Virus record (IMG/VR): IMGVR_UViG_3300030102_006934
Coordinates: 316,344-380,343 of that record
Direction: 5' to 3' (one strand)
DNA length: 64,000 bases
The notes below the pieces were generated by a model. That model was not told the DNA's origin, did not search any database, and worked only from the letters and a program-made list of their open reading frames with translations. Both the position numbers and the translations under genes were made by a program. This document shows, one piece after another, positions 12,391 to 57,157 of this stretch. Each line of letters begins with the position of its first letter. Positions within the stretch are counted from its first letter, which is position 1.

Positions 12391-13839
12391 ATGAACATAA
12401 AAAGGGTTATACGAGAAGAGTTGAGTGACTTTGACTGGGTTGAAGAGATACCCAGTGTATTACCCAAAGATAGTGATTGGTGGATAATCAATGATGTTGA
12501 TCCCTATAGTTTAGAGGTAAGTGAAGAAATACAAGATTTTGTATTTAAACAAGGTTTTACTTGGATGTCGGGTCGGAAAAATTTCGTACCCAACAAGGTC
12601 GTAGCAATCTCACATCGAGGTGGAACATATGATCAACAATTAGGTAGATTTGGTTTTTACCGTCCATCTGACCATTCACCAAGTGACATAGAAAGATATG
12701 AAACAGGGAAAGATGACCTAGTTTATCGATGGAGTGAAATCGTTAAACCAATTAAAGAATCGGATGATATGGATTGGATTAGAGATATAAAACCAACAGA
12801 CCCAATCGGTGATTTCCTCATGAAAAAATTTCATGAGAAAATGGTTACTTATTTATCGTTGGGTGGTAGAAAAGGTGATGTTATTTCTAGGGAATGGGCT
12901 ACCGTTGAAGCTTTTTTAATTGAATTAAGGGAATTAAAAGAGAATGGCTTTGTTAATTTTTTAAGTAGGGTATTATTACAAAGTCATGTCGATAGACCTT
13001 ACCCACATGTCTTAAAGGCTATAGAAGACTCAGGTTTTGACGTTAATAAGTCAGAAGAAACCAAAAGACTTTATAAAATATTTCAGTCTTATAACTCTTT
13101 GGGTAATAGAATAAAAAGGACTTTAAAAAAAACTTTCATAAGAGAGAATGACCTAGATTGGATTGCTGGTGTTAGTAAAGACTATTGGGATTATTATGAT
13201 GCTGTGGTTTTCAAAAAAACATTGTTTGATGCTGAATTTAAGAAGTTTATTAACCAAGCCCTAAAATCCGTACAACCAACCAACGCTTCAGATTGGGAAG
13301 AAGATGATGAGATGAGTGATTTAGAGTACTTAAATTATAGGATTAGAAGACATGGCCAAGCTTTTATCGGAAAATACAGAGATGAAAAAGGTCGGAATGT
13401 TTTAGTTTTTGGTCAGGACCCAGATTATGAACTATACCCCCAAGTAAAGGATGCTAAAACTATAAATTACGAAGATATAAAAAAGGGGTTGTTCGAATCC
13501 AACGACTTTAGTTGGATCCAAGATATAGAACCACCGGTATTTAAACAACTAGATATTGCCACAAAAGATGATAATGATATAAACGTAAAGTGGGGTGATA
13601 ATGGGGATTTTAGTGAGGTGATAGATTCTAGTGGTCATAGGTATTTTAATCAAAGGGAATTAGGTTTATTTTTAGGTCTTTCTTATAGAAATTGGTCTGA
13701 AACTATTAATAATCTAGGGAAGTCAAATCTACTATTATATATAAAACACTTGATTGATTCTATAGAGTGGAGTTTACCAAGAGAACAGGAAGATTATGAT
13801 GATTTTATTAAATTATATAAAATAGTGGAAAAGTTATGA
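12391..13839 (+). CDS. Modular xE-DFDW polyprotein (4 modules)
   Basis: IREELSDFDWV, IKESDDMDWI, IRENDLDWI, LFESNDFSWI. Confidence 0.85.
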   Translation: MNIKRVIREELSDFDWVEEIPSVLPKDSDWWIINDVDPYSLEVSEEIQDFVFKQGFTWMSGRKNFVPNKVVAISHRGGTYDQQLGRFGFYRPSDHSPSDIERYETGKDDLVYRWSEIVKPIKESDDMDWIRDIKPTDPIGDFLMKKFHEKMVTYLSLGGRKGDVISREWATVEAFLIELRELKENGFVNFLSRVLLQSHVDRPYPHVLKAIEDSGFDVNKSEETKRLYKIFQSYNSLGNRIKRTLKKTFIRENDLDWIAGVSKDYWDYYDAVVFKKTLFDAEFKKFINQALKSVQPTNASDWEEDDEMSDLEYLNYRIRRHGQAFIGKYRDEKGRNVLVFGQDPDYELYPQVKDAKTINYEDIKKGLFESNDFSWIQDIEPPVFKQLDIATKDDNDINVKWGDNGDFSEVIDSSGHRYFNQRELGLFLGLSYRNWSETINNLGKSNLLLYIKHLIDSIEWSLPREQEDYDDFIKLYKIVEKL

Positions 13840-14366
13840 ACCTAAAAAAAATTATAAAAGAGGAATTAATTAAAGAATCTGGTGTAGAAAATTATCTACA
13901 ATCAATATCTAGTATAACTTCAGGTAATCAAAAAAAGTATTACCAATGGATTTTAGATAATCTAGAAAAAATTCCTGTTGTTAGTTATCGTTCTAACGAA
14001 GAACTAAAAGATAAAATAGATTCTTTTGTGGGAAAAATGAGACGCCGTGGTAGTTTTTGTGAAAAGAAAGGTTGTTTTGATACTGCCTATAATACAGCAA
14101 TGCATGTTCCTGGAGTTCATTATATAGAAGGTTATGTTCAATCCATGATACCTATTGTTCACGCATGGAATTATCTTCCAGAAGAAGGTATATATTTTGA
14201 TTTAATTAACGATATAGCTTGGGAAGAAGAAGATTCACACTTTAACGAATACTATAAGGTTATAGATTTAGATAAGTCAGGTGTGTTAAAATGGTCCATT
14301 GAAACTGGTTACGGTGGTGGATTCCTAGAAAGCCCAAAGTTTGTTAAACATATTTTAAAACAATAA
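13836..14366 (+). CDS. Leader-bearing protein, possible papain/transglutaminase-like fold
   Basis: MNLKKIIKEELIKE; KGCFDTA, YIEGYV, IVHAWN. Confidence 0.7.
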   Translation: MNLKKIIKEELIKESGVENYLQSISSITSGNQKKYYQWILDNLEKIPVVSYRSNEELKDKIDSFVGKMRRRGSFCEKKGCFDTAYNTAMHVPGVHYIEGYVQSMIPIVHAWNYLPEEGIYFDLINDIAWEEEDSHFNEYYKVIDLDKSGVLKWSIETGYGGGFLESPKFVKHILKQ

Positions 14367-14382
14367 TTAAATATTTATTATT

Positions 14383-15408
14383 ATGAACATCAAAAGAATT
14401 ATAAAAGAGGAGATGGATGACTTTGATTGGGTTAGAAATATAGAGGTTGATACTGATTTAACCCCTGCTCAACTTTACAATAGAATTAATGATTTACCAA
14501 ATGGTATAGTTGGCCCTTATGTCGGTGAAAACTTCGCTGATATTAAGTATGAGAATGGTAGGTACTATTTAATGGTTGATGATTTTTGTGATTTTAAAGA
14601 ATGGTTTAGTGATAGAGAAAACGGTTCTCAAGGTTATTATATGAATCAATGGGCTTTTACACAAGCTTTTTGTGGAGAAGATGATTTTTTTGAACCTTAT
14701 GGTGATTTGGTTTATGATTGGATTGACCAAGTATGGGAACTTGTTGCGGGGGATGAAAAATTATATAATTATGTAGTTGATTACATTACTGAAAACTTAG
14801 TTGGGGATGAGATGAGATTAGATAATGAGGAAAAAATATTAACTTTAGAAGATGTTCTTACTTGGTCAGCTGATTCAGATGTTTTAGGAATGGTTATAAA
14901 TGAACTAGATGTTTTTGAGGATTTAAAATGGGAATTAGAGAGATCTTACGAAAATGCTTATAATACATTTGTTGTTGATAATATGTATAAAGCAGGTAGG
15001 GATGCTATCACAGATGTTGTGGGTGATGGTGAAAGAAAAGATGTAGAACTTTATAATTCATACAGTAAATCCAATTACAACGCTAATAAATTAGTTTTTG
15101 ACGTGACGAGTATGTTGTCAGATTATCTTTATGAGGCTATTGAGTATTGTATAGATAATAGATGTAAACCTTATTGGAAACCAGAGAATTATGATTTTGA
15201 ATCGGAGGGTGAGACGGAAGAAGAAGCTTTTGAAGATTTTTGTCATGAGTGTATGAATTACCCCTTTGATGACCATGGGTCTTTCCTTTCTTTTATGAAA
15301 GAAATATTAGAAGAAAATGGGGACTTATTAAATCCTAGAGTCGATGATTACCCTAGTAACGATGAGATAGAAGATTATTTTATAGAAGACGTACATGGAA
15401 GATTCTAA
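14383..15408 (+). CDS. Acidic xE-DFDW family protein (paralog B1)
   Basis: ATATTTAT at 14371; MNIKRIIKEEMDDFDWV; similar to the C-terminal module of 15395-16759. Confidence 0.85.
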   Translation: MNIKRIIKEEMDDFDWVRNIEVDTDLTPAQLYNRINDLPNGIVGPYVGENFADIKYENGRYYLMVDDFCDFKEWFSDRENGSQGYYMNQWAFTQAFCGEDDFFEPYGDLVYDWIDQVWELVAGDEKLYNYVVDYITENLVGDEMRLDNEEKILTLEDVLTWSADSDVLGMVINELDVFEDLKWELERSYENAYNTFVVDNMYKAGRDAITDVVGDGERKDVELYNSYSKSNYNANKLVFDVTSMLSDYLYEAIEYCIDNRCKPYWKPENYDFESEGETEEEAFEDFCHECMNYPFDDHGSFLSFMKEILEENGDLLNPRVDDYPSNDEIEDYFIEDVHGRF

Positions 15409-16759
15409 AAAAACAAATTTAAAATTAATTATACGAGAAGAGTTGGATGACTTTGATTGGGTCAGAGACGTGAATACCAATCAAGATATCGCATTAGACA
15501 TTGTTAATAAAACTAAATTTTTTGTGTTAGACGGTAGTTTAAGGGTAGACCTACCTTTTATGAGTTATTATGAAGGTTATCCAGTGAAACAGTTATTTAA
15601 CTCCTCGTCATTACTTAAAAGTAATAGCCCTACTATTATGTTCCTTAATTACGTTAGCCAAAATCATGGGTTTGAAAGAACCGACTTCATGGCCAAATAT
15701 AACATAAACGCAAATGTACGTGATATATGGTTTAGGTATAAAAATTTAATGACACAAAAAGTTTTAGACAACCTTAAAGATAAACCAATTAACGAATCAG
15801 ATGACTTTGGTTGGGTTAGGGATATAAAGATTGATTATGATTTAACTCCTGCTCAGTTTTACCATAGGTATGAAGGTAATTTACCACTAAAATTTGTAGG
15901 ACCACTAATAGATAATGGATTTATTGATATAGACTATGATGGAGATGAACTTTATTTAAAATTGGAAGACGGTTGGTGTGATTTAAAATCACTTTTTACG
16001 GAACATGATACCAGTTCTTCTCAAGGAGCATACATTAACAAAAGTTTAGTTAATAATTTATATTGTGATGAGGATTACTTTGAACCATTCGATGGGATAG
16101 TTTATGATTGGGAAGATCAAGTTTGGGGCCTTATAACTCAAGATGATGAACTATATAAATACATAATAGACCATATAAACGAAAATATTGTGGGTTACCA
16201 AATGGATTTTGAGGGTGAACAAAGAACTCTAACTAAGGAAGATATTCTTGAATGGTCTGCCGACTCCGATGGGTTGGGTGAAGTCATCAATGACTTGAAT
16301 GTTTTTGAGGATTTAAAATGGGAATTAGAACTTTCTTATGAAAATGCTTATAACAATGTAATTAGAGATAATATTTACGAATCCGTTAGAAAAAGTGTTG
16401 AGGATTATCTTGGTCCGGCTGATTGGTATGGTAATGTTTTAACTTTTAAAGTAACTGAACCTCTTTTAGAACTTATAGGTAATGAAATTGGTGATTGTTG
16501 GGAAAACTGTAAACGACTTTGGGATCCAAAAGAATATGAAGATACTTATATGATGTTCAATAAAACCGAAGAAGAAGCTTTTGAGGAATACTGTGGTTCT
16601 TGTTTTGACCACCCATTTGATTCATATGGTTACTTTTTGGATTTCTTTAGTGAGTACTTATCTGAAGAAGGGGAATTACTAAACCCAAGGCTTGATGAAT
16701 TCGCGTCAGATGCTGAAATGTTACCATATTTTAAAGACGAGGTCTATTCTAGATTTTAA
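15395..16759 (+). CDS. Two-module xE-DFDW polyprotein (paralog B2)
   Basis: IIREELDDFDWV; INESDDFGWV. Confidence 0.85.
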   Translation: MEDSKKTNLKLIIREELDDFDWVRDVNTNQDIALDIVNKTKFFVLDGSLRVDLPFMSYYEGYPVKQLFNSSSLLKSNSPTIMFLNYVSQNHGFERTDFMAKYNINANVRDIWFRYKNLMTQKVLDNLKDKPINESDDFGWVRDIKIDYDLTPAQFYHRYEGNLPLKFVGPLIDNGFIDIDYDGDELYLKLEDGWCDLKSLFTEHDTSSSQGAYINKSLVNNLYCDEDYFEPFDGIVYDWEDQVWGLITQDDELYKYIIDHINENIVGYQMDFEGEQRTLTKEDILEWSADSDGLGEVINDLNVFEDLKWELELSYENAYNNVIRDNIYESVRKSVEDYLGPADWYGNVLTFKVTEPLLELIGNEIGDCWENCKRLWDPKEYEDTYMMFNKTEEEAFEEYCGSCFDHPFDSYGYFLDFFSEYLSEEGELLNPRLDEFASDAEMLPYFKDEVYSRF

Positions 16760-29112: not shown

Positions 29113-29877
29113 ATGAAAAACTTAATCAAAAAAATATTAAAAGAAGATTTTAATCCTGAAGATTTTGAATGGGTTAGAGAGATAGACCCATTGAACACCT
29201 TCAAGGAGTGGGTAGAATCAACTAGTTTAATAAAAAAAAATAATCCTAGTGGAAAAACTGATAGACAATGGTTGAACCACATAGAAAGGACTAAAAATTG
29301 GGTTGAAGATTTTACAGATGAAACACATACATTATTAGAATATGTAGAAAATTTAAACAGTTCAGCTGGTTTAGAACACACAAAAGATATGCTTGGTGCG
29401 ATACATGATTATATAGGCACTGAAGATGGAAATAGTGAAGGTTATTATGTTGGTACTTATAGAGAAGGGGAAAGATATTTATGGATGTTTTTAAAATATT
29501 TTAGTCCATACGGTGAAAAATATAATCTAACACTAAAAGAGTTATTAGACATATCACATAAGTATTTTGAAAGTCGTGTTGACGCTGATATAGAAAAGTC
29601 AGAGTCATTAAGAGAATATAATGAAATTGAAAAAAGAAGTACCACTGAAATCACAATATCTTTATTAAATGAGGCAGCTGACCATTTCGCTAAAGGTTTA
29701 AGGTTAATTGAATCGGCGACACAATTTGCTTATGACTCAAACAACGAAGATTTAATTAGAGATTTGGAAGAACTAAGGATATCAATTCAAAGTGGGAGTG
29801 ATAAGATGTGGGTTGAAAACCCAAACAGTATGAATATTGTTAATCGTATTAATGATATAATCACTAAATATAGTTAA
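29113..29877 (+). CDS. xE-DFDW family protein
   Basis: MKNLIKKILKEDFNPEDFEWV. Confidence 0.8.
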   Translation: MKNLIKKILKEDFNPEDFEWVREIDPLNTFKEWVESTSLIKKNNPSGKTDRQWLNHIERTKNWVEDFTDETHTLLEYVENLNSSAGLEHTKDMLGAIHDYIGTEDGNSEGYYVGTYREGERYLWMFLKYFSPYGEKYNLTLKELLDISHKYFESRVDADIEKSESLREYNEIEKRSTTEITISLLNEAADHFAKGLRLIESATQFAYDSNNEDLIRDLEELRISIQSGSDKMWVENPNSMNIVNRINDIITKYS

Positions 29878-30444: not shown

Positions 30445-30446
30445 AA

Positions 30447-30782
30447 ATGAAACATTTAATTAGAAAAATACTAAATGAAGGTGATTTTGATTGGGTAGAA
30501 GATTCAAAAAGTCCTAATATACCCTTAAAAGACATATCTGACTGGGTATATGAAACTAGATATAAAATTGCTCCAGTCATGCAAAGTATAGATGAATTCA
30601 AAAAACAAAACTTTATCAAAGGTGGGTCTAATAATTCGAATACCACTAATTCAGAAGTACTAGAAGACGTTTTATATTCTATCACACAAATAGGTACTGA
30701 AATAAGTAATATATATGATAGTCTTGAACAAATAGACGAAGAACTTCACTCATTAAGTTTTGTAATTGAAGATGATGAATAA
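30447..30782 (+). CDS. xE-DFDW family protein
   Basis: MKHLIRKILNEGDFDWV. Confidence 0.8.
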   Translation: MKHLIRKILNEGDFDWVEDSKSPNIPLKDISDWVYETRYKIAPVMQSIDEFKKQNFIKGGSNNSNTTNSEVLEDVLYSITQIGTEISNIYDSLEQIDEELHSLSFVIEDDE

Positions 30783-42890: not shown

Positions 42891-45800
42891 GTGATGTCAA
42901 TTAAAAAAATTTTAAAAGAGTATAATAATTTCGATTGGATTAATGATATAAATCCTATTTCCCCACATATAGAAAATATTGTGGGTAAAAAACTACGTCA
43001 TCGAGACAATAACTTAGCACATATACCCAACCACAACGATTTAAGTAAAATAAAAGACGGTGGTGTTCTTTTATTAAAACCCAAGATGGATTATTATTTT
43101 GTTGTGGACCGTATAGACCGTATAACAAATGAGGTTATTATTAAAATATTCCCTAAAAGAAAATCTCGCTACAAACAAGAAGAAGTAAGATATTCAATTA
43201 GTGATATGGAGAATTTAATTCGGTTGGGTATATGGGTTCTTGATGATAGTATAGAAGAATCTGATAATACCATAGTAGAAGAAGAGGAAATAGGGCTAGA
43301 CAATGATGAAAATATATCACAAGAAGAAATAGATTATATTAATAAAGAGTATGGTTCTTTAAGGGATAGGGAAAATATAAAAAACACATTGAAGAACCCA
43401 CCTTTTAACTTCAATCCGTCCCAAATAAGAAATGGAAGTATCAACACTTATGTTGTGAGATATATAGTTTCTAAAGAAGGAAATAAAGGTAATAAAGATG
43501 TTTTTGTAAAAGAAAAATTTGAAAATTTTTTGGATAAAGTAAATAGTGTATTGGGCACTAATTACAAAAACTCTAGTGGATATAGGGAATTGACATCATC
43601 AGCAAAACCCAAAAAACAAGGGGCTTTGACTCAACGACAAATATTGGTACACAACTTTAATATGAGTAAGGAAGCAATTGAAAGTTGGTTACAAGTAAAA
43701 CAAAATAACCAAAGAGTTGTTGGACAAAAGAACCTAAGACAGCCAAAAACACAGGAAGAGATAGATACTAACCTTACTAAACTCATAGATTATTTAGCTA
43801 AAACTAAACTTAGTGAAATTATTTTATCATTAGATGGTTTACTAGAAAAGTTTGGGTTAAGTCGTGATGATAAAAGTAAAAATGACGCAATCCCCAAAAA
43901 AGATGAGATTGTTAAACAATTAATTGATGAATTTGAACAGAACTTAAGGGTGAAGTTTTATTTAAATTACATTGGTGGTAATGTTGTAGATCAAAGGTCT
44001 AACTGGGCAACATTTGTGAGGTATTCTAAAGCAATTAAAAAAATTATAGAAAACAGTGAACTACCAAAAGACCTCGGAATAGACTTTAAAAATAGTAAGA
44101 ACTATAAAAGGTTAAAGGATTTATTTGAAAAAATAAAAGAAAAAGAATACTGTTACATTTTTAGTGAAAACTGTGAATTATCCAGTTCTGATATAGAAAA
44201 AGTTATGGACTTTTTCGGTAAAAAATATGAAAATAGTTTTTTAACTAAAGGATTTAAAAAAGATACTAATAGGGGTCTTGAGTCTAGGATTCATAATTTA
44301 GATATGGTGGGGTATAACTTTTCTGAAAAAATAAAATCAAAAGATTTTAATGCGGACGAAATTTATAATTATATAACTAAAAACATTAAAAATTATTTAG
44401 ATAATACAGAAACTATTGTTAAGTATGATTTATTGGCTAAAGGGGAAAGAAAAGACAATAAGGGTAATATTATAATACCCAACGAAGGTAAAGTTGAGGT
44501 AAAGGATATAAACTATTTAGATAGTTACTTATCAGAATTTTTAGCATCTCCAGTCAAAAGAGCGGAATATGGGGTGAAAGATGACCCTAAATATTTAAAA
44601 AGGTATAATGAAGTGGTTGATAGGGTTTATACCTATTTAACAGAAAATTATAAAGAAATCATTATTAGTAAAATTCAAGAAGGTTTAGAAGGTATAATAA
44701 TATCTAATAATATCTATGTCCCTAATAAAAAAAATAACATTAAATTTTATTTATCCGATATTGGTCGAAGTAACCCCAAAAAACAAAGAAGAATTACTGT
44801 TAGATACGAGATTAATGAAAGTAACTGGGAAAATTTTTATATAATAGATGATAATGGTGTGTTACAACCACTAGATGAAGACACCAAAAAAGTGTTAAGA
44901 TATAAAGGTGAAAAAATTTCTGAATCTAACGACATTGATTGGATAAAAGATGCTTATAAAACAGAATGGACTTTTGATGATATCGCACAATTATATTATG
45001 CTGGTGACGTTGAAGCTGTTAAAATTGTTAGGTTTAAAGATTTAAAACACTTAAGGGGAGCTATTGAGTGGTGTCTTGGTGAGGATGCGGAGTTAGATTT
45101 TTTCAATGAATTCAAGGTCGGTAATATACGCCAGATACTTTCTACCAATTTAGACATTGACGGCCAAATATCACACAATAATTTTACAGTGAGTGATTTA
45201 GATTGTGGTTGGTGTCTAGATGACCCAGATTCCATTGGTTATAATTGTAATGAAAGACCTAAAACCATGTCTCTACGGGTTGATGGTCAAATATTCGAAG
45301 ACTCTTTTGCCTTCAGTGAGGATTGGGTTGAGTTAGAACCTATTATGAAATCAGATGAAATAAATGAATCTTCTGAGGGGTTAGAATGGATTAGGGATGT
45401 GGTACCTGACGACAGTGTAAGATTTGATAAAGATAAATTATATTACTTTAACCCACCACTAAACCATGATGAGATAATAAATTTAATGAATAGAATACCC
45501 AATGAAAGTAAGTATACACAAACCAAAAAATGGTTTGATAGGGTTTTTGGGGGTAGAGCACCACAGAGGTATATGACTTATTTTAATGTAGATGGTGGTG
45601 ATCGAAATGATGGTAAATTTTATGTTAGTGGTTGGTGTAGTGAAACTCGTTGGTCTCAGGTTAATGATGAGTATTATCCACACTCTGAACCAGTAAATGG
45701 TAGGGATGAATTTTTTGGACACTATAAAATTTCAGAAGAAAAGGTAAGTGAATCTAAAGACGATTTTGATTGGGCGAGGGACGTTAATCCAAATCCTTTT

Positions 45801-47627
45801 CACGGTACAAACATTAAATTCTATATAAACGCTACACCAACTCAAGAACAAGCTGAAAAGATTTGGGATTTATTAATTGATGCGGGTGTAACTGATTCGG
45901 CTAAAGTTAAAGAATACAACAGGGTGTATAAGTTGATGAGGGGTAGAGGTACATTTATGATGATTGACCACGATGGTGACTTTATGTATAATATTGATAA
46001 CTTATCTGAGTACGTTAGAAATGGAAGAATTAGTTCTGGTAATATTATTAATTTTACAGACATTTTTTCAGATGATGAACCTGATGATTATATAAAAGAA
46101 TCTAAAGATTTTGAATGGTTAGATGATGTACCACTAACTCTTAACCATATTTTTAATGAGTTAAGTATTGGTGATGAGTTAACCCTAAAGGGCAATACTT
46201 ATGGTGCTCATCTAAATATGCAACATTTTAAATACACAGAACCTTTTACAATTACGATACAATCAATCGGACCTAGATTAGAAGATTCTGATTTTAAAAT
46301 ATCAGTTAGAGAAAAGGAAGCTATAGTTAACTTAGGTATAAAACATAAGGGTGAACTACTTAAAAAGTACCCAAAATTTCATGTGTTTTCAAATAATTCG
46401 TTTTTTCCAGAGGATGGCGATTTAGAAGTTGTTTCTTGGGTTAAATCTGAAGATAAATTAGAAGAGTCCTCACAAGATTGGGATTGGGCCGAAACTCCAG
46501 AAGTAATCATAGGGGGTAAAAACGGTTTACCAAAAGAAAGTGTTCCTTTAGGTACTAAAGTGGTGAATTATGATGGTGACATATTCACCATAGAGGATAT
46601 TACTGGAGGGTATATGGATTTCCAACATGTATGGGGTAGTGACCAAAAGACAGCTTGGTTGGGTCCTAAAGATGATGAGGATAATAAAAATTGGCATAAT
46701 ACCTTATGGTTAAGAAAAGCAACTTCTGAAGATTTAAATGAATCTGAAAATGAGTGGGACTGGGCAAAGAATATAGTTACTGATGGTTTAGATCTTAAGT
46801 TTAGTGAAGGGATGTGTTTACTTAGGAAAGACGGTACTCGATGGTTGGTAGTGGATACACCGAAACACGCTTCAAAATCCACAACATTAGTTTGGCTTCA
46901 ACGAACTCACACAAATGGGATAGATATAACTGAAAAAAAGAGGCCAATCTCACCCTTTAGAGAATCAACTCTTTCTAGGCAAATACAAAGTGGTGATATA
47001 ACAATCTGTAATAAACCTTTAAAGGAATCCGATGACTTTGATTGGGTTGATGATATTGATGCTGTAGACCCTAAAAAACCTAAGCCTGGTTATGTTTATA
47101 ATTGGAGTGGTTATAGTGATATAATTGATGATGATGAGGTGCTAACCGATACCATAATTATTACAAAAATAAAGGGTGATGACGAATGGGTTAGTGGGGG
47201 TTTTGAAATTATGTTTGTTCCAGAAGGTACTTCTCCCAATTCCGAAGATGCGGTTCATAAACAAGTTTTTGATAAATTAGTTGATAAGGGTGAAATTCAA
47301 TTTCTTCACAAATTAGATACTGATATGGTTAATGAATCTAAAGATGATTTTGATTGGGTTAGAGATACAATACCTGTTGAACTAGAAGACCCTCAATCTT
47401 GGGTCGGTAGGTCCTTTGGTTATGGTCCTGAAATAGTAGATAACATGGATGGAGCGGAACTAGCAATGGGTGATGATAAGGAATATTATACTATAGATAG
47501 TATTGATGGAAATGGTAATTTAGCTTTAACGAGGCACCACCCCAATAGAAGAAGCATGAGTGATAGTAGTACTTCAGTTATTTCTTTAAGAGATTATATT
47601 AGTAATGGTAGATGGGTATGGGTTTAA
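42891..47627 (+). CDS. 1578-aa modular xE-DFDW polyprotein
   Basis: ATATTTAT at 42878; leader plus 8 internal xE-S..[DE]W linkers. Confidence 0.9.
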   Translation: MMSIKKILKEYNNFDWINDINPISPHIENIVGKKLRHRDNNLAHIPNHNDLSKIKDGGVLLLKPKMDYYFVVDRIDRITNEVIIKIFPKRKSRYKQEEVRYSISDMENLIRLGIWVLDDSIEESDNTIVEEEEIGLDNDENISQEEIDYINKEYGSLRDRENIKNTLKNPPFNFNPSQIRNGSINTYVVRYIVSKEGNKGNKDVFVKEKFENFLDKVNSVLGTNYKNSSGYRELTSSAKPKKQGALTQRQILVHNFNMSKEAIESWLQVKQNNQRVVGQKNLRQPKTQEEIDTNLTKLIDYLAKTKLSEIILSLDGLLEKFGLSRDDKSKNDAIPKKDEIVKQLIDEFEQNLRVKFYLNYIGGNVVDQRSNWATFVRYSKAIKKIIENSELPKDLGIDFKNSKNYKRLKDLFEKIKEKEYCYIFSENCELSSSDIEKVMDFFGKKYENSFLTKGFKKDTNRGLESRIHNLDMVGYNFSEKIKSKDFNADEIYNYITKNIKNYLDNTETIVKYDLLAKGERKDNKGNIIIPNEGKVEVKDINYLDSYLSEFLASPVKRAEYGVKDDPKYLKRYNEVVDRVYTYLTENYKEIIISKIQEGLEGIIISNNIYVPNKKNNIKFYLSDIGRSNPKKQRRITVRYEINESNWENFYIIDDNGVLQPLDEDTKKVLRYKGEKISESNDIDWIKDAYKTEWTFDDIAQLYYAGDVEAVKIVRFKDLKHLRGAIEWCLGEDAELDFFNEFKVGNIRQILSTNLDIDGQISHNNFTVSDLDCGWCLDDPDSIGYNCNERPKTMSLRVDGQIFEDSFAFSEDWVELEPIMKSDEINESSEGLEWIRDVVPDDSVRFDKDKLYYFNPPLNHDEIINLMNRIPNESKYTQTKKWFDRVFGGRAPQRYMTYFNVDGGDRNDGKFYVSGWCSETRWSQVNDEYYPHSEPVNGRDEFFGHYKISEEKVSESKDDFDWARDVNPNPFHGTNIKFYINATPTQEQAEKIWDLLIDAGVTDSAKVKEYNRVYKLMRGRGTFMMIDHDGDFMYNIDNLSEYVRNGRISSGNIINFTDIFSDDEPDDYIKESKDFEWLDDVPLTLNHIFNELSIGDELTLKGNTYGAHLNMQHFKYTEPFTITIQSIGPRLEDSDFKISVREKEAIVNLGIKHKGELLKKYPKFHVFSNNSFFPEDGDLEVVSWVKSEDKLEESSQDWDWAETPEVIIGGKNGLPKESVPLGTKVVNYDGDIFTIEDITGGYMDFQHVWGSDQKTAWLGPKDDEDNKNWHNTLWLRKATSEDLNESENEWDWAKNIVTDGLDLKFSEGMCLLRKDGTRWLVVDTPKHASKSTTLVWLQRTHTNGIDITEKKRPISPFRESTLSRQIQSGDITICNKPLKESDDFDWVDDIDAVDPKKPKPGYVYNWSGYSDIIDDDEVLTDTIIITKIKGDDEWVSGGFEIMFVPEGTSPNSEDAVHKQVFDKLVDKGEIQFLHKLDTDMVNESKDDFDWVRDTIPVELEDPQSWVGRSFGYGPEIVDNMDGAELAMGDDKEYYTIDSIDGNGNLALTRHHPNRRSMSDSSTSVISLRDYISNGRWVWV

Positions 47628-47844: not shown

Positions 47845-48888
47845 ATGGATTCAGAAAAAAAAGAAGGTAAAGTTTCAAACGATTTTGATTGGGTAAAAGA
47901 TGTTAAAGCAAGACTACCTTTAAGAGTTGGTACTTGTTTAACTTTTAAACACTCAAAAGAGGAAGAAGAATGGGTAGAAGATGAATACGGTAACATGATT
48001 GACCACGGTAAAATGAACTGGCATATCACAAGTAAGTTTATAGATGTGTATAATGACGATAAACCAACCTTTTCAATGGTAGCCACAGATAGAATGGGTG
48101 AAAGTCGTCAAATTTTTATGGAAGTGGAAAAGGTTAAAGAATTGTATGAGGAAGGTGTTTATGAGCCTTGTAAAAAACAGCCATACCTAAAAAGAGTAAT
48201 GAAAGAAGAATCCGATGATTTTGATTGGGTTGAGGATGTTTCCAACACTTTACCCAGAAATGATAATTGGATGTTAATTAACGATGTAGACCCTGATTCT
48301 TTGGAAGTGTCTAAAGATATACAAAATTACCTATTCAGTAAGGGTTTGTTTTGGAATACAGGTAGAAAAACCCCATTGTATCAACGTATATTAGCGATAC
48401 ACTATGTCTTACCACACCGAATACATAGTGGTAGCTTTACCTACGTACCTAATAGTATACCTCATGAAAAAGCAAGATTAGAAGTTGAGTATGATAGGGA
48501 AGAACTTCTCAAAAAAGGAAAACATGTTTACTATTGGAGTCAATTAAAACCAGAAAAAGATAATATCAAAGAATCAAAAGATTTAAAATGGATCGAAGAT
48601 ATTGATTTTACAGACCCTAAAAAACCCAAACGTGGTTATGTTTATGATTGGAAGGGTTATAGTGATAGTGTTGCTAATTTAGGATATCAGTTAGGTGAAA
48701 TTGGGGATATTATAATTATTAAAGAACCATTTAGCAACCCAAGTCATAGGTACCCCAAGTGGAAGATGCATTACTTCGATACTTTAAATTTTGATTGGGG
48801 TGAAGAATTAGATGGTATTTCTGAAATTGAATTCAATAGAAAAATAGATGACGGTACCATAACCTACCTATACAAGTTAGGTCAATAA
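47845..48888 (+). CDS. Three-module xE-DFDW polyprotein
   Basis: NDFDWV, MKEESDDFDWV, IKESKDLKWI. Confidence 0.85.
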   Translation: MDSEKKEGKVSNDFDWVKDVKARLPLRVGTCLTFKHSKEEEEWVEDEYGNMIDHGKMNWHITSKFIDVYNDDKPTFSMVATDRMGESRQIFMEVEKVKELYEEGVYEPCKKQPYLKRVMKEESDDFDWVEDVSNTLPRNDNWMLINDVDPDSLEVSKDIQNYLFSKGLFWNTGRKTPLYQRILAIHYVLPHRIHSGSFTYVPNSIPHEKARLEVEYDREELLKKGKHVYYWSQLKPEKDNIKESKDLKWIEDIDFTDPKKPKRGYVYDWKGYSDSVANLGYQLGEIGDIIIIKEPFSNPSHRYPKWKMHYFDTLNFDWGEELDGISEIEFNRKIDDGTITYLYKLGQ

Positions 48889-52082: not shown

Positions 52083-52715
52083 ATGAGTATTAAAAAAATT
52101 ATAAGGGAAGAGTTAGAGTCAATGGTTTATTCGGATAAGATTAAGCCCAAACACAAAAAAAAGATGAGTCGTGAACTTAAGTTTTTTAAAGACTTCCCTA
52201 TTCGAAAATTTGCTAATATACCACCACCTAAAAACGAATCCATAGAAACTGAAGAAGAAATAGATTATTTAGAGAGTATACCAGTTAGTAAAAAATTTGT
52301 GGACGTGGCAGATGAATTCGAAGATTACTTTGGTGAATTTCTTAAAATTAGAGGATTAAAATACCCAAAGAAAGAATTATCAGAATTAATAGAAGAGACT
52401 AAAACAATAATTCTAAAATTAAAATACCACTATAACAGACCAAGACCATACCAAATAGCTAATGAAAAAAATATGTCTTTGAATTCTGAAGATTTAGCAT
52501 CAGCTAAAACACCCTCTTACCCATCTGGACACGCAACACAAGGTACTTTTATTAGTCGTTATTTAGCCGATTTATACCCAAAATACGAGAAAGAACTTTT
52601 AGACATGGGTGAGGATATCGCTTTTAGTAGAAATATGGCAAAAGTACATTACCCAAGTGACACTGAGTTAGGTAAAATACTTGGTAATGATTTGTATGAT
52701 TATCTAGGAAAATAG
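52083..52715 (+). CDS. PAP2/haloperoxidase-superfamily phosphatase with leader
   Basis: KYHYNRPRP, PSYPSGH, SRNMAKVHYPSD; leader MSIKKIIREELE; ATATTTAT at 52068. Confidence 0.85.
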   Translation: MSIKKIIREELESMVYSDKIKPKHKKKMSRELKFFKDFPIRKFANIPPPKNESIETEEEIDYLESIPVSKKFVDVADEFEDYFGEFLKIRGLKYPKKELSELIEETKTIILKLKYHYNRPRPYQIANEKNMSLNSEDLASAKTPSYPSGHATQGTFISRYLADLYPKYEKELLDMGEDIAFSRNMAKVHYPSDTELGKILGNDLYDYLGK

Positions 52716-52773: not shown

Positions 52774-54060
52774 ATGAACTTAAAAACCATCATTAAGTCA
52801 GAACTATTATTTGAATCTTTGGAAGATAGGTTAAAATCTGCCTATCGAAAATGGTGTAAAAAAATGAAATTAAAAGACCAAGACACCCTTGATGATATTA
52901 AGAATGCTGATGGTTATGTAGAAGAACTTGATGTATATGCAGAAGAATTTGAGGACCCTCACAGTAAAATGTACCAAAAAGTTGAAGAACTATACGCCAA
53001 GGAAGATTATGAAGGTATACATAATTTGATAGCTGACCACCAATGTAGGGATTTGTATATTGGTGCAGTATTTAAAGATTGGCTTTCTTATAGGAACCTA
53101 ACAAAAAGTTCAGATATATTCCAATATAAAAGTGAGAGAGAACTTGCGGGGGAGTTAGAGGACGCAAAAGAGAAATCATTTACCAAAAAGTTAAAGAAAG
53201 CTTCAGAGGGTGAAGATTTTGATAAAATTTGGGAGAATGATGATATGTTGATTGTTGTCCCTAAGTCACACGTTGGAGCTTGTAAATTTGGTCAGGGTAC
53301 TAAATGGTGTACCGCTAGTAAAACTGGTAATTACTTTGATCCTTATTATAAAAAAGGTATCTTATATAGGGTACTACAAAAAAATGATAATTATAAAGAA
53401 TTGTTCTCTAATTTTCAGATGAATAATAAGTTAGTCTCTGACATTGAAAACCTAAGTAAAGTCTCCATAAATCTAAGAAGAAAACAAGACTCTATGTCTA
53501 TGGTGGATAAAGTAGATTATGCTTTTGGAAATAAATCAACTTTAGAGTTTTTAAACTCCTTACCTAGTGAAGGTTATAAAGCCATTAAAAATTACCATAG
53601 TTTAAACGAACAAAGTATAAAAAATATTATAAGAGAAGAGTTGGATGACTTTGATTGGGTTAAAAATACTAACCCAATTCCAAATGAAATTTTAGACATA
53701 AGTAAGTACCGAGATGGGAATTATAAATTTTGGTTGGGAGATATATCAAAAGAAACTCAACTACAAATATTGGATTATATAAGTGAGGTGATTAGGGGTG
53801 ACGATAATTTACATACCAATGGTACATTGTATGAAGTTCGTAAAAGGGTGGATAAAAATTTAGTCTCTATTAATTCACTTTTTTTTGAGATTAAACAGGT
53901 TGGCTTAAAAAAAGGAATAAATTTATCAATAATGGGTTGGTACCCAAATGACCCACATTTTGAAAGAGAAGAAAGATTAGAATATTGTAGAAATTATTTT
54001 TATCAAACGGATGATATAAATTTGTCTGATGTAGATTTGGGGGAACAAAATAAAATTTGA
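52774..54060 (+). CDS. Family A domain fused to an xE-DFDW module
   Basis: ACKFGQGTKWC; internal SIKNIIREELDDFDWV. Confidence 0.85.
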   Translation: MNLKTIIKSELLFESLEDRLKSAYRKWCKKMKLKDQDTLDDIKNADGYVEELDVYAEEFEDPHSKMYQKVEELYAKEDYEGIHNLIADHQCRDLYIGAVFKDWLSYRNLTKSSDIFQYKSERELAGELEDAKEKSFTKKLKKASEGEDFDKIWENDDMLIVVPKSHVGACKFGQGTKWCTASKTGNYFDPYYKKGILYRVLQKNDNYKELFSNFQMNNKLVSDIENLSKVSINLRRKQDSMSMVDKVDYAFGNKSTLEFLNSLPSEGYKAIKNYHSLNEQSIKNIIREELDDFDWVKNTNPIPNEILDISKYRDGNYKFWLGDISKETQLQILDYISEVIRGDDNLHTNGTLYEVRKRVDKNLVSINSLFFEIKQVGLKKGINLSIMGWYPNDPHFEREERLEYCRNYFYQTDDINLSDVDLGEQNKI

Positions 54061-54160: not shown

Positions 54161-54183
54161 ATGCCTATTAGATATTTATTAGT

Positions 54184-54564
54184 ATGAAGAAAATAATAAA
54201 AAGAATTTTAAGAGAAGAATTCAATGATTTTGATTGGATTAAGGACACTGGTGGTGATAAATATGTCCCTATAAGAGTTATTCTCAATAAGCTTGATGAG
54301 ACTTATTATGGGGAAAATCCTAATGAAATTCTAGAATACGAAAATGTTTTCAAAGTACCATTAGAAGATTTTGTGAGAATTACAAATAGTACGAATTATA
54401 CAGACGAGGAATATGAGATTATTACCCCAATAGGTCATAATTTACTTAATTATGCTTATGATTGTGAACTTAATCCATTTGTTTGTAAAGAAATTGATGA
54501 TTTTTTCGATACGGAGGTTGACGAATATATTGAGGGTATAGTATTATTGGATGATAATTTTTAA
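54184..54564 (+). CDS. xE-DFDW family protein
   Basis: ATATTTAT at 54172; ILREEFNDFDWI. Confidence 0.8.
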   Translation: MKKIIKRILREEFNDFDWIKDTGGDKYVPIRVILNKLDETYYGENPNEILEYENVFKVPLEDFVRITNSTNYTDEEYEIITPIGHNLLNYAYDCELNPFVCKEIDDFFDTEVDEYIEGIVLLDDNF

Positions 54565-54571
54565 TTTATAA

Positions 54572-57157
54572 ATGAGAGTTTTAATAAATAAAATATTAAA
54601 AGAGTTACATAGTAAAAGTATTATTAAAAAAGTACTTAATGAAAATTACCAGGACGAAAATATATCACAAGAAGAAAAAAATAGTATCATTGATGAGTAT
54701 GGGTGGTTAAAAAATGAAGAAAAAATTGAAAGTATTTTAAAAAACCCGCCTTTTTCAAAGAAAACTAGGACCTATAGAATAGTTAATAGCTATAGGGTTA
54801 GGTATATTATATCTAAGGAAATAAAAAAAAATGTATATTTTAATAACGCGGGTTGGGCTAACTTTGTAAAGAAGGTGGGTCAAGTAATAGGCTTAAAAAT
54901 AAAAGCAACAGATGATACCGTTTCAAAATTCTTTAAAAATATCGATGAGACCAAAAAATATGGTTTAGAGGGGAAACATTTAGAAGATAGAAAAAATACT
55001 TCCACGGAGTTAAAAAAGAATTGGAATAAAATAGACCCTGAAGTATACGAAGAAAGAATAGAACATACTATTAATTATTTAAAAAATACCAATATTACAG
55101 AATTGGAAAATTCAAAGACAAGCTTATTGACACGGTTTTCTTTAATACTAAGATACCAAGAAGAAATAATGAACTATCTTATTGATTATTTTAAAGATGA
55201 CCCAAAAATAAGGTTTTATCTTAGTTATCTTAATAAAGGTGGAAAATATTGGGGTACACTTGTAAAATACCAAAAAAAACTAAGTAATGTGCTAGACAAC
55301 CCTAATATTAGTGAAAAATATGATGACATTGTAGAAATGAAAAAATCATATAAGGCTATTATTGAAGAAGAAGCACCTTATTTGTTTAACGAAAAGGGTA
55401 ATTTTACTAAAAAAGAAAAGGAAATATTAGTAAATTGGTTTAATTTAACAAGTTATGAACATTCTTTCACAGAATTAGGGTTTTATAAACCAGAAGGAAA
55501 AGGTGCGGAGTCTTTAATACATAATCTACACAGTGCAGGTATTAGATACAATGTTAGTAATGAAATAAAAAATAATACTGATACTGATGACGTTGTAAAA
55601 TTTGTGATAAACAATATTATTAATTATTTAAAAAACACAAAAGATATAATTAAATACGATATTGTTAGTAAAGATACTATAAAAGATATTAATGGAAATG
55701 AAGTGATTCCAAAGGGTAGTAAAATAGAGGTTAAAGACATTAAGAATAGTGATAGTTATTTTGCTGAATTTTTATCATCACCTGTTAAAAGCGGTTCAGA
55801 AATATTGAATAATGAAGTTTATAGAGGAAGGTATAATAAAATAATAGAAGGAATTTATAATTGGTTATCTAACGATAGTGTGGGTATGGGTATTAAAAAT
55901 ACTATTAAGTGGTTAATGACTAACGATTTAGAAGGTATAATAATATCTAATAATATCTATGTCCCTAATAAAGATGGTAACATTGAATTTTATTTATCTA
56001 ATATTGGTCAAAACAACCCAAAAAATCATATAAGAATTACAATAAGATATAATATTAATTTAGATAAATCGAAAAATTTCTATAAAATAGGAGATGGTAA
56101 GTGGAAATTAAACGGTAAAGCATCCAAAAAAGGTATTCTTTACCCACTACCAGAAACAGAAAGTAATTTAATAAGACCCATAGAGAAACAAATTTATAAA
56201 ACAATAGAAGAATCTAAGACTAAATCTACAATAAATAAAATATTAAAAGAAGAATTCGATGATTTCGATTGGATTAAGGACACTTTTACCGAACTAAACA
56301 AAAGTGAAAAATGGATGTTGGTTAATGATATAGACCGTGAGAGTATATCGGAAGGTCATGAAATACAAAAATATCTATTTGACTTGGGTTATAGTTGGGG
56401 TACTGGTGATTTAAAAAATTCACTAAAAGATTTTTGTATCTATACAATATATCATTTCGGAAATATTAGAAATGATGAACACTTATATTACGGAGATGGT
56501 TGTAGAAGTGCTGATATAAGAATTTCAGATAAAGATATTAAAAGTGGTGAACATATAGTTTATTATTGGAGTGAGTTAAAACCTAAAACAATAAAGGAAG
56601 AAAACGATTTTAAATGGATTGATGAACCAAGAAACAACCCATTAGATGGTTTAAGATTAACAACACCTATGGGTAGAGCTGGTAGTGGTGGTAGTGGTTT
56701 AACAATAAAAGACGATGGTGGTACATATGTTACTGTTACCTCTTCTAACGGTTCTAGTGAATATCATAGGGGTACTGTTAAAAACTTTATAAGAATGGGT
56801 ATTTGGTTACCAATAGATTCTATGAATGAATCAGATGATTTTGATTGGGCGAAAGAAATAAAACCAACGTTGAATGTTGCCTTTGAAGAAGGTCTGATTA
56901 AAGCGGGTGATATTTTGACACTTTCTGGGGAACTAATGGATGATGAAGGAAGACACACAATACAAGTTTCAGATTTTAAAATAAAAATAGATCAAATATA
57001 TGGGCCTAATAGTGTATATAGAGACATCACCAGTTCTCTTTTCATACCACTACAAGAAAAATATTTCAAACACTTAGGTTATTATGAAAATGAATTTAAT
57101 GATTCTATCAGATTTGCTAAGAAAGATGGTGAGTTAGAAATATTAGATATATCTTAA
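54572..57157 (+). CDS. 861-aa modular xE-DFDW polyprotein
   Basis: Large module homologous to module 2 of 42891; ILKEEFDDFDWI, IKEENDFKWI, MNESDDFDWA. Confidence 0.9.
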   Translation: MRVLINKILKELHSKSIIKKVLNENYQDENISQEEKNSIIDEYGWLKNEEKIESILKNPPFSKKTRTYRIVNSYRVRYIISKEIKKNVYFNNAGWANFVKKVGQVIGLKIKATDDTVSKFFKNIDETKKYGLEGKHLEDRKNTSTELKKNWNKIDPEVYEERIEHTINYLKNTNITELENSKTSLLTRFSLILRYQEEIMNYLIDYFKDDPKIRFYLSYLNKGGKYWGTLVKYQKKLSNVLDNPNISEKYDDIVEMKKSYKAIIEEEAPYLFNEKGNFTKKEKEILVNWFNLTSYEHSFTELGFYKPEGKGAESLIHNLHSAGIRYNVSNEIKNNTDTDDVVKFVINNIINYLKNTKDIIKYDIVSKDTIKDINGNEVIPKGSKIEVKDIKNSDSYFAEFLSSPVKSGSEILNNEVYRGRYNKIIEGIYNWLSNDSVGMGIKNTIKWLMTNDLEGIIISNNIYVPNKDGNIEFYLSNIGQNNPKNHIRITIRYNINLDKSKNFYKIGDGKWKLNGKASKKGILYPLPETESNLIRPIEKQIYKTIEESKTKSTINKILKEEFDDFDWIKDTFTELNKSEKWMLVNDIDRESISEGHEIQKYLFDLGYSWGTGDLKNSLKDFCIYTIYHFGNIRNDEHLYYGDGCRSADIRISDKDIKSGEHIVYYWSELKPKTIKEENDFKWIDEPRNNPLDGLRLTTPMGRAGSGGSGLTIKDDGGTYVTVTSSNGSSEYHRGTVKNFIRMGIWLPIDSMNESDDFDWAKEIKPTLNVAFEEGLIKAGDILTLSGELMDDEGRHTIQVSDFKIKIDQIYGPNSVYRDITSSLFIPLQEKYFKHLGYYENEFNDSIRFAKKDGELEILDIS

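What the first reader, a model, noticed from the sequence alone, without database searches (positions are those of the whole stretch)
12391..57157. Modules are shuffled between polyproteins, and linker DNA is conserved enough to act as a recombination junction
Seen: the same module occurs in different hosts. The WxLxNDVD..S.EV...IQ.YLF..G..W module is in 12391 (about 12475), 47845 (about 48260) and 54572 (about 56305). DPKKPKxGYVYxWxGYSD is in 42891 (about 47060) and 47845 (about 48605). The TLN..F...GD.LTL.G module is in 42891 (about 46125) and 54572 (about 56860). The 550-aa module is shared by 42891 and 54572. Linker DNA repeats: GAGAAGAGTTGGATGACTTTGATTGGGT is an exact 28-mer at 15435 and 53633; GAATCCGATGAYTTTGATTGGGTTGA occurs at 47025 and 48208. 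Relict leaders sit inside ORFs (QSIKNIIREE in 52774, TINKILKEE in 54572, YLKRVMKEE in 47845), as if whole genes had fused in frame. Inference: a recombination-driven cassette library in which the linker serves both as protease site and as crossover point.
Basis: partly seen in the sequence, partly recalled or inferred. Interest (0 to 1): 0.78.

Follow-up and report, generated by a model that had tools for sequence, protein, structure and literature searches.

The report
Connector-tagged shuffled protein modules, marine jumbo phage
An uncultured 380-kb marine phage, and hundreds of related metagenomic proteins, build proteins from about 100-residue modules that each follow one conserved connector peptide, and relatives show whole modules gained, lost and swapped exactly at these connectors; no Pfam family and none of my paper searches match this system, and what the connector does is unknown.

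Summary
The window is the last 64 kb of a 380-kb IMG/VR viral contig. At least 14 of its ORFs carry an N-terminal leader (M-x-[IL]-K-[KR]-I-[IL]-[KR]-E-E), a connector ([ILVM]-x-E-S-D-D-[FL]-D-W-[IV]-[KR]-D-[VI]-x-P), or both. I found 28-30 connectors, all in + strand ORF frames. Both DNA repeats and all three internal leaders sit at the stated coordinates, and four shared modules are confirmed.

Relatives support cassette exchange. Module X (47881-48237) occurs in at least 15 architectures, with homology ending at connectors. A syntenic relative differs by three indels bounded by connectors or leaders. X is 95-99% identical in DNA on backbones that are only 64-85% identical.

The DNA claim is not supported. 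Synonymous sites in connectors are no more conserved than in module bodies (1.09 against 1.135 times the codon-bias expectation). The 28-mer is marginal (P=0.026). Selection therefore acts on the peptide, and the microhomology is a by-product.

The protease idea is untested but plausible: 81% of 444 connectors contain hydrophobic-x-E, usually followed by S, which resembles the cleavage motif of T4-type prohead proteases.

A profile of the tag finds 754 protein clusters, and almost none has a Pfam domain. I rate it a new variant of known kinds and quite interesting.

The parts
12191..12388 (+). Single-module gene (65 aa): leader plus connector (W codon at 12236). Preceded by an imperfect hairpin and the ATATTTATTA motif at 12179.
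12391..13839 (+). Four-module protein (482 aa): leader, A module, unique module, F12 module, unique module. Connector W codons at 12436, 12775, 13159, 13513.
   Evidence: the F12 module recurs at 92% nt identity in L037, next to X
13836..14366 (+). Leader-only gene (176 aa): has the leader but no DFDW connector.
14383..15408 (+). Leader, connector (W 14428) and the 325-aa acidic module B (pI 4.05).
15395..16759 (+). Leader, connector (W 15458), F7 module, connector (W 15812), module B paralog. Contains one copy of the exact 28-mer at 15435-15462.
29113..30782 (+). Three tightly packed tandem leader genes (29113-29877, 29878-30444, 30447-30782). W codons at 29170, 29923, 30492.
   Evidence: in L038 the ortholog of 29113 has X in place of its N-terminal part
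42891..47627 (+). Nine-module protein of 1578 aa (true start probably the ATG at 42894). Order: leader, C (550-aa module), then eight modules of about 90-150 aa. W codons at 42936, 44940, 45387, 45771, 46116, 46485, 46761, 47043, 47355.
   Evidence: P0063 is a collinear ortholog at 89.6%. L032 has one extra A-type module inserted at the connector at 45746.
47845..48888 (+). Three-module protein (347 aa): short N-terminus, connector, X, leader-like segment plus connector, A, connector, D. W codons at 47890, 48226, 48589.
47881..48237 (+). Module X with its flanking connector halves. This is the unit found at 84-99% nt identity in at least 5 other genomic contexts and absent from this locus in L032/L033/L034.
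52083..52715 (+). Leader fused to a PAP2-family phosphatase domain, with no DFDW connector. This shows that the leader and the connector are separable elements.
52774..54060 (+). Two-part protein. The N-part matches phrog_17056. The internal leader starts at 53617, with connector W at 53656 and the second copy of the exact 28-mer at 53633-53660. The C-module is a stand-alone leader gene in L035.
54184..54564 (+). Single-module leader gene (126 aa; W 54235). Preceded by the hairpin at 54130-54160 and ATATTTATTA at 54172. L032 has an extra 132-aa leader gene here, bounded by leader repeats.
54572..57157 (+). 861-aa protein: C module paralog, internal leader (56231), connector (W 56270), A module, connector (W 56615), small module, connector (W 56846), TLN module.

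Best explanation
The window holds part of a large protein family of uncultured marine jumbo phages for which I found no description.

Shown:
- The proteins are built from independent modules, mostly acidic, with a median length of 108 aa.
- Each module follows a conserved connector peptide ([ILVM]-x-E-S-D-D-[FL]-D-W-[IV]-[KR]-D-[VI]-x-P).
- Proteins begin with a short amphipathic leader (M-x-[IL]-K-[KR]-I-[IL]-[KR]-E-E).
- Modules exist both as single leader-tagged genes and as fused arrays of up to about 14 modules.
- Among related phages, whole modules are inserted, deleted, swapped and permuted in frame, and genes are fused or split. The breakpoints lie inside the 15-30 nt stretches that encode connectors or leaders.
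- One module (X) has spread recently across diverged genomes.
- Connector DNA similarity is what amino-acid conservation plus AT-rich codon bias predicts. Selection is therefore on the peptide.

Inferred:
- Recombination between co-infecting or paralogous copies uses this by-product microhomology, and selection keeps only in-frame products that preserve whole modules.
- The connector and leader form a protein-level sorting and processing signal. The most likely model follows the T4 capsid-targeting sequence and the hydrophobic-x-E cleavage site of T4-type prohead proteases. Under this model any module placed behind a connector would be delivered, and perhaps released, as a small separate protein, giving a diversifying set of host-takeover or anti-defence proteins.
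For: Family and motif. The 33-position profile finds 754 representative proteins at E<=1e-3, with up to 13-14 connectors per protein. In 136 of the best 146 proteins the first connector lies within 45 aa of the N-terminus. Spacing has a median of 108 aa (IQR 89-120), and module pI has a median of 4.7, against 6.3 for other ORFs in the window.

Shuffling: architectures are. Both X-A and A-X orders exist. P0008 joins pieces that lie in 12391, 47845 and 42891 in the window.

Breakpoints: L032 compared with the window has an extra 356-nt module at the connector at 45746. It lacks the 336-nt X between connectors W47890 and W48226, where the two alignments overlap by 26 nt. It also has an extra gene bounded by leader repeats at 54184-54240. 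The same architecture appears in three assemblies. DNA homology ends lie within 32 nt of a W codon in 16 of 17 cases.

Recent spread: X is 94.9-98.8% identical in DNA in L037-L040, where flanking genes are 64-85% identical.

Fusion and fission: and (P0009).

Peptide-level selection.

Cleavage-like pattern: [ILVMF]-x-E sits at -6 or -7 from the W in 81% of 444 connectors, against a background of 4.5%. P1' is S in 183 of 206.

Precedents in the literature:
- T4 internal proteins carry 10-19 aa propeptides that target otherwise unrelated proteins into the prohead.
- T4-type and giant-phage prohead proteases all cleave after Glu (PMC9026906, PMC5694885, PMC3012670).

A GH24 lysozyme carrying a 260-aa leader-tagged extension resembles virion-associated lysins.
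Against: There is no evidence of cleavage, of virion location, or of a matching protease. The window and the fetched loci contain no recognisable head genes.

The conserved DFDW part lies downstream of the putative cut, so it would stay on the mature module. This is unlike the T4 targeting sequence, which is removed.

The modules are acidic, whereas T4 IPs are basic.

The structure models were too poor to show whether connectors are exposed (pLDDT 38.6 and 53.8).

Not all differences between relatives lie at connectors. Exceptions are 43283-43665 inside module C, the X-to-29113 junction at 'KE|YN' in L038, and the gene indels at 39126-39792 and 49637-50089.

Breakpoints at domain boundaries can arise from selection alone.

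The polyprotein 42891 is collinear in one 90%-identical relative, so shuffling is episodic rather than rampant.
Confidence: 0.55

Rival explanations
1. The connector is just a structural inter-domain element, such as a capping strand or helix shared by many small domains. The proteins work uncleaved as multidomain proteins. Breakpoints sit at connectors only because selection removes recombinants that cut through a domain.
For: Domain shuffling at boundaries is common. Many modules share a C-terminal helix-G-x-aromatic pattern, seen directly, which suggests related small folds. The X model is a beta-rich core followed by a helix. The polyprotein order is stable in a 90% relative.
Against: The same connector precedes modules of very different size and sequence: 90-aa modules, the 325-aa module B, the 550-aa module C, and a lysozyme extension. 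The leader alone also occurs on a PAP2 enzyme. In the X model the connector residues have pLDDT below 50 and make no confident contact with the core, which is weak evidence. The strict hydrophobic-x-E-S register has no obvious reason in a passive linker.
Confidence: 0.25
2. The acidic-aromatic DFDW motif is a short linear motif that binds a host or phage partner, such as a clamp-like or SSB-like hub, a chaperone, or a sorting receptor for another destination such as a phage compartment or export. Arrays would give multivalent binding, and no cleavage is needed.
For: The motif is short, acidic and aromatic, strongly conserved at the peptide level but not at synonymous sites, and repeated up to 14 times per protein. 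From my own knowledge, acidic-aromatic tails and motifs are typical ligands of hubs such as SSB-interacting proteins and the T4 clamp.
Against: No partner is known and no similarity to a defined motif class was tested. This reading does not explain the conserved hydrophobic-x-E-S just upstream, nor why the N-terminal leader can occur without DFDW.
Confidence: 0.15
3. The connector DNA is itself a selected recombination signal, either a target of a dedicated recombinase or nuclease or a sequence kept identical to promote crossover.
For: Exact repeats of 26-28 nt exist. Mean pairwise identity of connector DNA is slightly above the codon-resampling null (28.99 against 28.25 of 54 nt, P=0.003). 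Crossovers do fall there.
Against: The ratio of same-codon use to expectation is 1.09 in connectors and 1.135 in module bodies. The longest exact match of 28 nt compares with a null mean of 20.8 (P=0.026). Between orthologs, synonymous identity is 96.9% against 92.9% (P=0.095). I saw no inverted repeats or recombinase gene next to the arrays.
Confidence: 0.04
4. The variant architectures are metagenome assembly chimeras created at repeated connectors or through the near-identical X module.
For: Logan k=31 contigs break at connectors, and many contigs share only about 33 nt there. X is a 330-nt near-identical repeat shared by different genomes, so an assembler could jump from one genome to another through it.
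Against: Connector identities (28 nt or less) are far shorter than the k=119-127 used for the ENA contigs. The X-less form is found on 9 contigs from several samples and by three assemblers. Other forms are also found repeatedly. Each left or right junction is spanned by k-mers, even if some particular left-right combinations through X were chimeric.
Confidence: 0.03

Closest known systems
T4 capsid-targeting sequences (CTS) on internal head proteins (IPI-III, Alt), and processing by the gp21 prohead protease
   Same: A short conserved N-terminal peptide (10-19 aa in T4, about 10-12 aa here) sits on otherwise unrelated, fast-evolving accessory proteins. Both have a hydrophobic-x-Glu pattern at the end of the tag. 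The tag makes any cargo a family member (PMC9026906, PMC3012670, PMC5694885).
   Different: There is no sequence similarity to the T4 CTS. Here the tag also recurs internally between modules, up to about 14 times. The most conserved part (DFDW) lies after the putative cut. The modules are acidic rather than basic. Packaging and cleavage are unproven.
Polyvalent proteins of phages and conjugative elements (Iyer et al. 2017, PMC5512222)
   Same: Many domains in one polypeptide (2-15 there, up to about 14 here). Free recombination of domain order. Predicted delivery with the DNA and predicted proteolytic processing.
   Different: None of their hallmark domains was detected. The modules here are small and uniform, about 108 aa. 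A single conserved connector peptide marks every boundary, which is not a described feature of polyvalent proteins.
PeSL regulatory cassettes that mediate modular shuffling in hyperplastic regions of T4-type phages (PMC2839356, PMC4122927)
   Same: Short repeated sequences at gene boundaries coincide with the insertions, deletions and replacements that distinguish close relatives. At 54130-54240 a hairpin, a promoter-like motif and a leader together form the repeat that bounds a gene indel.
   Different: Most exchanges here are intragenic and in frame, at peptide-coding connectors rather than at non-coding promoter and terminator cassettes.
gp38 adhesins of T-even phages: hypervariable segments separated by conserved glycine-rich motifs (PMC3157838)
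   Same: Conserved in-frame coding motifs delimit variable segments that are easily interchanged.
   Different: There the motifs form the structural core of a single domain in one host-range protein. Here they separate autonomous modules in hundreds of different proteins.

Membership tests
T4-type CTS-tagged internal head proteins | Short conserved N-terminal propeptide shared by otherwise unrelated proteins | tested here: met
   At least 13 ORFs in the window. The profile finds 754 clusters, and 136 of the best 146 carry the tag at the N-terminus.
T4-type CTS-tagged internal head proteins | Tag ends in the protease motif (hydrophobic-x-Glu, cleavage after Glu) | tested here: inconclusive
   The pattern is present in 81% of 444 connectors, against a 4.5% background. 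Only the pattern was tested, not cleavage.
T4-type CTS-tagged internal head proteins | [quoted passage not shown] | not testable with these tools
   There is no isolate and no proteome. A weak hint is that one tagged lysozyme matches a PHROG named 'internal virion lysozyme motif'.
T4-type CTS-tagged internal head proteins | Genome encodes a gp21-like (Glu-specific) prohead protease | not tested
   Only the last 64 kb and one 12-kb piece (L014) of the 380-kb contig were available. None of the ORFs scanned there matched a head gene or prohead protease.
Polyvalent proteins (Iyer et al. 2017) | Several domains of disparate biochemical activity in one polypeptide | tested here: inconclusive
   Multi-module architecture is met. 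The activities are unknown, since only lysozyme, PAP2, MIB_HERC2 and a Zn_protease-like domain were recognised.
Polyvalent proteins (Iyer et al. 2017) | Hallmark domains of the class (for example ARTs, the DNA methylase-helicase dyad, zincin-like peptidases, ArdC-N) | tested here: not met
   Pfam scans of the window proteins and of 119 family members found none of them. There is only an HExxH motif in the 901-aa protein of L014.
PeSL-type shuffling cassettes | Indels between close relatives are bounded by repeated promoter plus stem-loop cassettes | tested here: inconclusive
   One of three connector-bounded indels (54184) includes a hairpin and a promoter-like motif. The other two lie inside coding sequence.
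Protease-processed viral polyproteins | Precursor cleaved at conserved inter-domain sites into separate mature products | not testable with these tools
   Conserved inter-module sites exist, and the modules also occur as separate genes. Processing itself was not observed.

The most novel reading that the evidence does not exclude
The connector is a portable dual signal. Any module placed behind it would be loaded into the capsid, or another delivery route, and cut free after the connector Glu. If so, these jumbo phages carry a combinatorial, recombining library of small acidic injected effectors, encoded interchangeably as separate genes or as polyproteins. New effectors such as module X would sweep across diverged phage genomes by in-frame recombination at connectors.
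Probability: 0.3. Interest if true: 0.85.

Novelty: new variant of a known kind. Interest (0 to 1): 0.7.

Why it matters
This appears to be a large family with no description that I could find. It has at least 754 clusters at 50% identity, and Pfam recognises almost none of its members. One short peptide marks every module boundary, and comparative data show in-frame cassette exchange in progress.

It gives a concrete and testable handle on how jumbo phages diversify their accessory proteins. If the connector proves to be a targeting and cleavage signal, three things follow:
- It would generalise the T4 capsid-targeting principle to polyprotein arrays.
- It would flag hundreds of small acidic modules as candidate injected host-takeover or anti-defence proteins.
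- It would offer a natural tag for loading cargo into marine phage capsids.

It is also a clean case in which repeated DNA at recombination junctions is a by-product of peptide conservation rather than a selected DNA signal.

Tried and rejected
- Pfam and PHROG scans of the family proteins gave essentially nothing: PAP2 on 52083, phrog_17056 on the N-part of 52774, and weak sub-threshold hits on 29113.
- Searches of GenBank phages found no relative. I tried megablast of 20 kb, tblastn with 54572, with the 13-connector protein P0026, and with a 34-aa leader. A GP88/L5_gp82 protein hit only distant phages.
- ESM Atlas feature searches of modules C and B scored 0.55-0.64. The 'IpIV internal head protein' and 'ocr' clusters appeared only as weak leads, and I did not use them as evidence.
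- AlphaFold models were poor. The A-D model had pLDDT 38.6 and was discarded. The X model had pLDDT 53.8. Foldseek against PDB and BFVD gave no match at E<=1e-3, only low-TM hits to small beta-barrels such as PWWP.
- MAFFT placed the A and D fragments onto X, so alignments A1 and A2 were abandoned.
- A homolog search with the X-less protein P0003 returned only its four close relatives.
- Looking for head genes beside a 1480-aa array (L041) found none.
- Laying run contigs gave loose ends and joints at connector positions, but mostly with short sides, so this is only weak support.
- I rejected the idea that connector DNA is a selected recombination signal.
- I also rejected the idea that the upstream motif ATATTTATTA is specific to the family. 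It precedes other genes too, including on the - strand.

Full report
**What the window is.** It has 30% GC, nearly all genes on the + strand, and 8 tRNA genes. It encodes accessory enzymes: an HD domain protein, a CCA-adding-like enzyme, GH16, phosphomannomutase, thymidine kinase, a LOG-like protein, PAP2, PrsW, and an M43 peptidase with a type-IX secretion tail. It is the last 64 kb of IMGVR_UViG_3300030102_006934, a 380,343-bp viral contig. Identical genes occur in Tara Oceans and other marine assemblies. No GenBank phage is related. My reading is an uncultured marine jumbo phage, with the secretion-tail gene pointing to a Bacteroidota host.

**Checking the observation.**
- Both DNA repeats are exact at the stated coordinates.
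- A connector peptide recurs 28-30 times, always in + strand ORF frames. A narrow pattern finds none in the three - strand frames, and a broad one finds a single chance hit.
- From 87 non-redundant internal copies in the window and its relatives, the consensus is [IL]-[NKE]-E-S-D-D-[LF]-D-W-[IV]-[KR]-D-[VI]-x-P.
- At least 13 ORFs start with M-x-[IL]-K-[KR]-I-[IL]-[KR]-E-E. The same segment occurs internally at 48187, 53617 and 56231.
- The leader can occur without the DFDW part (13836, 52083 with its PAP2 domain, 52774). So there are two separable elements.
- Shared modules A, B, C and D are confirmed by BLASTP at 32-45% identity. The TLN module is only partly confirmed.

**Is connector DNA specially conserved? 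No.**
- Across 28 connectors, at positions where two copies have the same amino acid, the same codon is used 1.09 times as often as the window's codon usage predicts.
- In the aligned bodies of paralogous modules the ratio is 1.135.
- I resampled codons for the observed peptides. The longest exact match then averages 20.8 nt, and reaches 28 nt in 2.6% of trials.
- Mean pairwise identity is 28.99 of 54 nt, against 28.25 under the null (P=0.003), a very small excess.
- Between orthologs (window against L032), synonymous identity is 96.9% in connectors and 92.9% in bodies (P=0.095).
- Selection is therefore on the peptide. The 15-28 nt identities follow from that plus AT-rich codon bias.

**Do relatives show shuffling at connectors? 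Yes.**
- A homolog search with the 47845 protein returned 23 proteins that match only parts of it, at 55-96% identity, and range from 207 to 583 aa.
- Module X (47845 residues 11-132) is the shared part. Its homology always begins at one connector and ends at the next.
- Clustering all modules gives 23 families and 28 singletons.
- X has more than 10 different left and right neighbours. Both X-A and A-X orders occur.
- P0008 joins modules that lie in 12391, 47845 and 42891 in the window.
- P0003 and P0004 are the 47845 protein with X removed precisely.

**DNA-level comparison with the syntenic relative L032.** It is 88-96% identical to the window, and the same gene sizes appear in three assemblies. 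It differs in three ways:
- It has a 356-nt A-type module inserted at the connector at 45746.
- It lacks the 336-nt X, with a 26-nt overlap between the two flanking alignments.
- It has an extra 132-aa gene bounded by leader repeats at 54184-54240.

**Other contigs.** In four further contigs, 16 of 17 homology ends lie within 32 nt of a connector W codon. X is 94.9-98.8% identical in DNA where flanking genes are only 64-85% identical. Protein-level selection cannot explain that, so it indicates recent horizontal spread.

**Exceptions.**
- A divergent stretch inside module C (43283-43665).
- A junction at 'KE|YN' in L038.
- Two gene-sized indels outside the family (39126-39792 and 49637-50089).
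- One 90%-identical relative (P0063) has the whole 42891 protein collinear. Exchange is therefore episodic.

**Fusion and fission.**
- The C-terminal module of 52774 is a stand-alone, leader-tagged gene in the 292-kb relative. Identity is 44% (E 3e-37), and the alignment starts at the internal leader.
- The A module of 54572 sits at the N-terminus, behind a true leader, in P0009.
- In 47845 the leader-like YLKRVMKEE belongs to X. It accompanies X in all 20 aligned contexts, including C-terminal copies that end right after it.

**How wide the family is.**
- A 33-position profile of leader plus connector, searched with HMMER against 1.84 billion representatives, finds 754 proteins at E<=1e-3 and 52 at E<=1e-10. 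Some have up to 13-14 connectors.
- In the best 146 proteins, 136 have the first connector within 45 residues of the start.
- Connector spacing has a median of 108 aa (IQR 89-120).
- Module pI has a median of 4.7, against 6.3 for other ORFs in the window.
- Sampled clusters come only from metagenomes and are named 'hypothetical protein' or 'lysozyme'.
- Of 119 members, Pfam recognises only 2 lysozymes and 1 MIB_HERC2 domain. PHROGs gives unknown-function families and endolysin-type hits.
- Other loci add a Zn_protease-like domain, an L5_gp82 domain, and a 901-aa array that ends in a domain with an HEMKH motif.

**What the connector may do.** This part is inferred. The peptide is under strong selection, and 81% of 444 connectors contain [ILVMF]-x-E at a fixed register, against a 4.5% background. 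The next residue is S in 183 of 206. Three precedents from the literature are relevant:
- T4-type and giant-phage prohead proteases all cut after Glu within short motifs.
- T4 uses 10-19 residue N-terminal propeptides to load unrelated, fast-evolving internal proteins into the prohead (PMC9026906, PMC5694885, PMC3012670).
- Polyvalent proteins are multi-domain injected proteins thought to be processed by peptidases (PMC5512222).

The most likely model is a sorting and processing tag that lets modules act as separate small proteins. Points against it:
- There is no evidence of cleavage or packaging.
- No protease was identified.
- The DFDW part would stay on the product.
- The modules are acidic.
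- The structure models were uninformative.

The main rivals are a passive structural linker and a partner-binding linear motif.

**Verdict.**
- The cassette-library idea, with crossovers at connectors, is well supported.
- The claim that connector DNA is specially conserved is rejected.
- The protease function remains a plausible but untested inference.

In kind, this is a new variant that combines features of CTS-tagged internal proteins, polyvalent proteins, and repeat-mediated modular shuffling (PMC2839356, PMC3157838). No Pfam family and none of my paper searches matched this family.

Noticed in passing
window 5183, 10046, 12179, 14371, 22087(-), 41877(-), 42878, 52068, 52762, 54172, 60207: The 10-mer ATATTTATTA occurs 11 times, against 2.2 expected. 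Where I read the flanks (six leader genes) it lies 2-8 nt before the start codon, and the two - strand copies lie just upstream of - strand ORFs. One copy lies just before tRNA-Ala. It looks like a phage promoter or translation-start element that would give near-leaderless mRNAs. It is not specific to the tagged family.
   Followed up: partly
window 54130-54160 and about 12131-12160: G+C-rich hairpins with flanking A and T runs (bidirectional terminator-like) lie immediately upstream of the ATATTTATTA motif and a leader gene. This arrangement resembles T4-type PeSL cassettes.
   Followed up: partly
window 47881-48237 compared with L037, L038, L039, L040: Module X is 95-99% identical in DNA in contigs whose neighbouring genes are only 64-85% identical to the window. 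A single 336-nt coding module therefore seems to be sweeping through diverged phage genomes.
   Followed up: partly
window 49637-50089: ORF 49644-50096 (150 aa, signal-peptide-like N-terminus, glycine-rich, beta-barrel-like) is absent from relative L032. A contig of run X9 skips it cleanly (465 nt). A similar 162-aa ORF lies in L014 (8051-8539, - strand).
   Followed up: partly
window 39126-39792: A 666-nt stretch present in the window but absent from the otherwise 96%-identical relative L032. I did not examine its content.
   Followed up: no
window 50616-51842: An M43 (pappalysin-like) metallopeptidase with a type-IX secretion C-terminal sorting domain, encoded by a phage. It points to a Bacteroidota host and to a secreted phage-encoded protease.
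   Followed up: no
window about 19980-20170 (L001 15597-15785): A 62-aa gene with a ribosomal protein S21 Pfam hit lies among the phage genes, as has been reported for some marine phages.
   Followed up: no
window 1642-5273 and 34610-34682: Eight tRNA genes (Glu, Asp, Ser, Met, Leu, Arg, Ala, Gly) are interspersed with a CCA-adding-like nucleotidyltransferase (4049-4789) and an HD-domain protein (1010-1546).
   Followed up: no
L014 5242-7947 (same contig, 116.6-119.3 kb): A 901-aa protein with four connectors ends in a roughly 300-aa domain containing an HEMKH (HExxH) motif. This could be a zincin-like peptidase attached to a module array. Pfam gave no hit.
   Followed up: partly
window 14383-15408 and 15812-16759: Module B is about 320 aa and extremely acidic (whole-protein pI 4.05-4.18). 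The Atlas feature search listed an 'ocr DNA mimic' cluster, but only at a chance-level score.
   Followed up: partly
window 48183-48228: In the source run, Logan (k=31) contigs break with a 30-nt overlap exactly at the connector after X. Many unrelated contigs in four runs share only about 33 nt at connectors. Connectors therefore act as repeat nodes in assembly graphs and can fragment these genes.
   Followed up: partly
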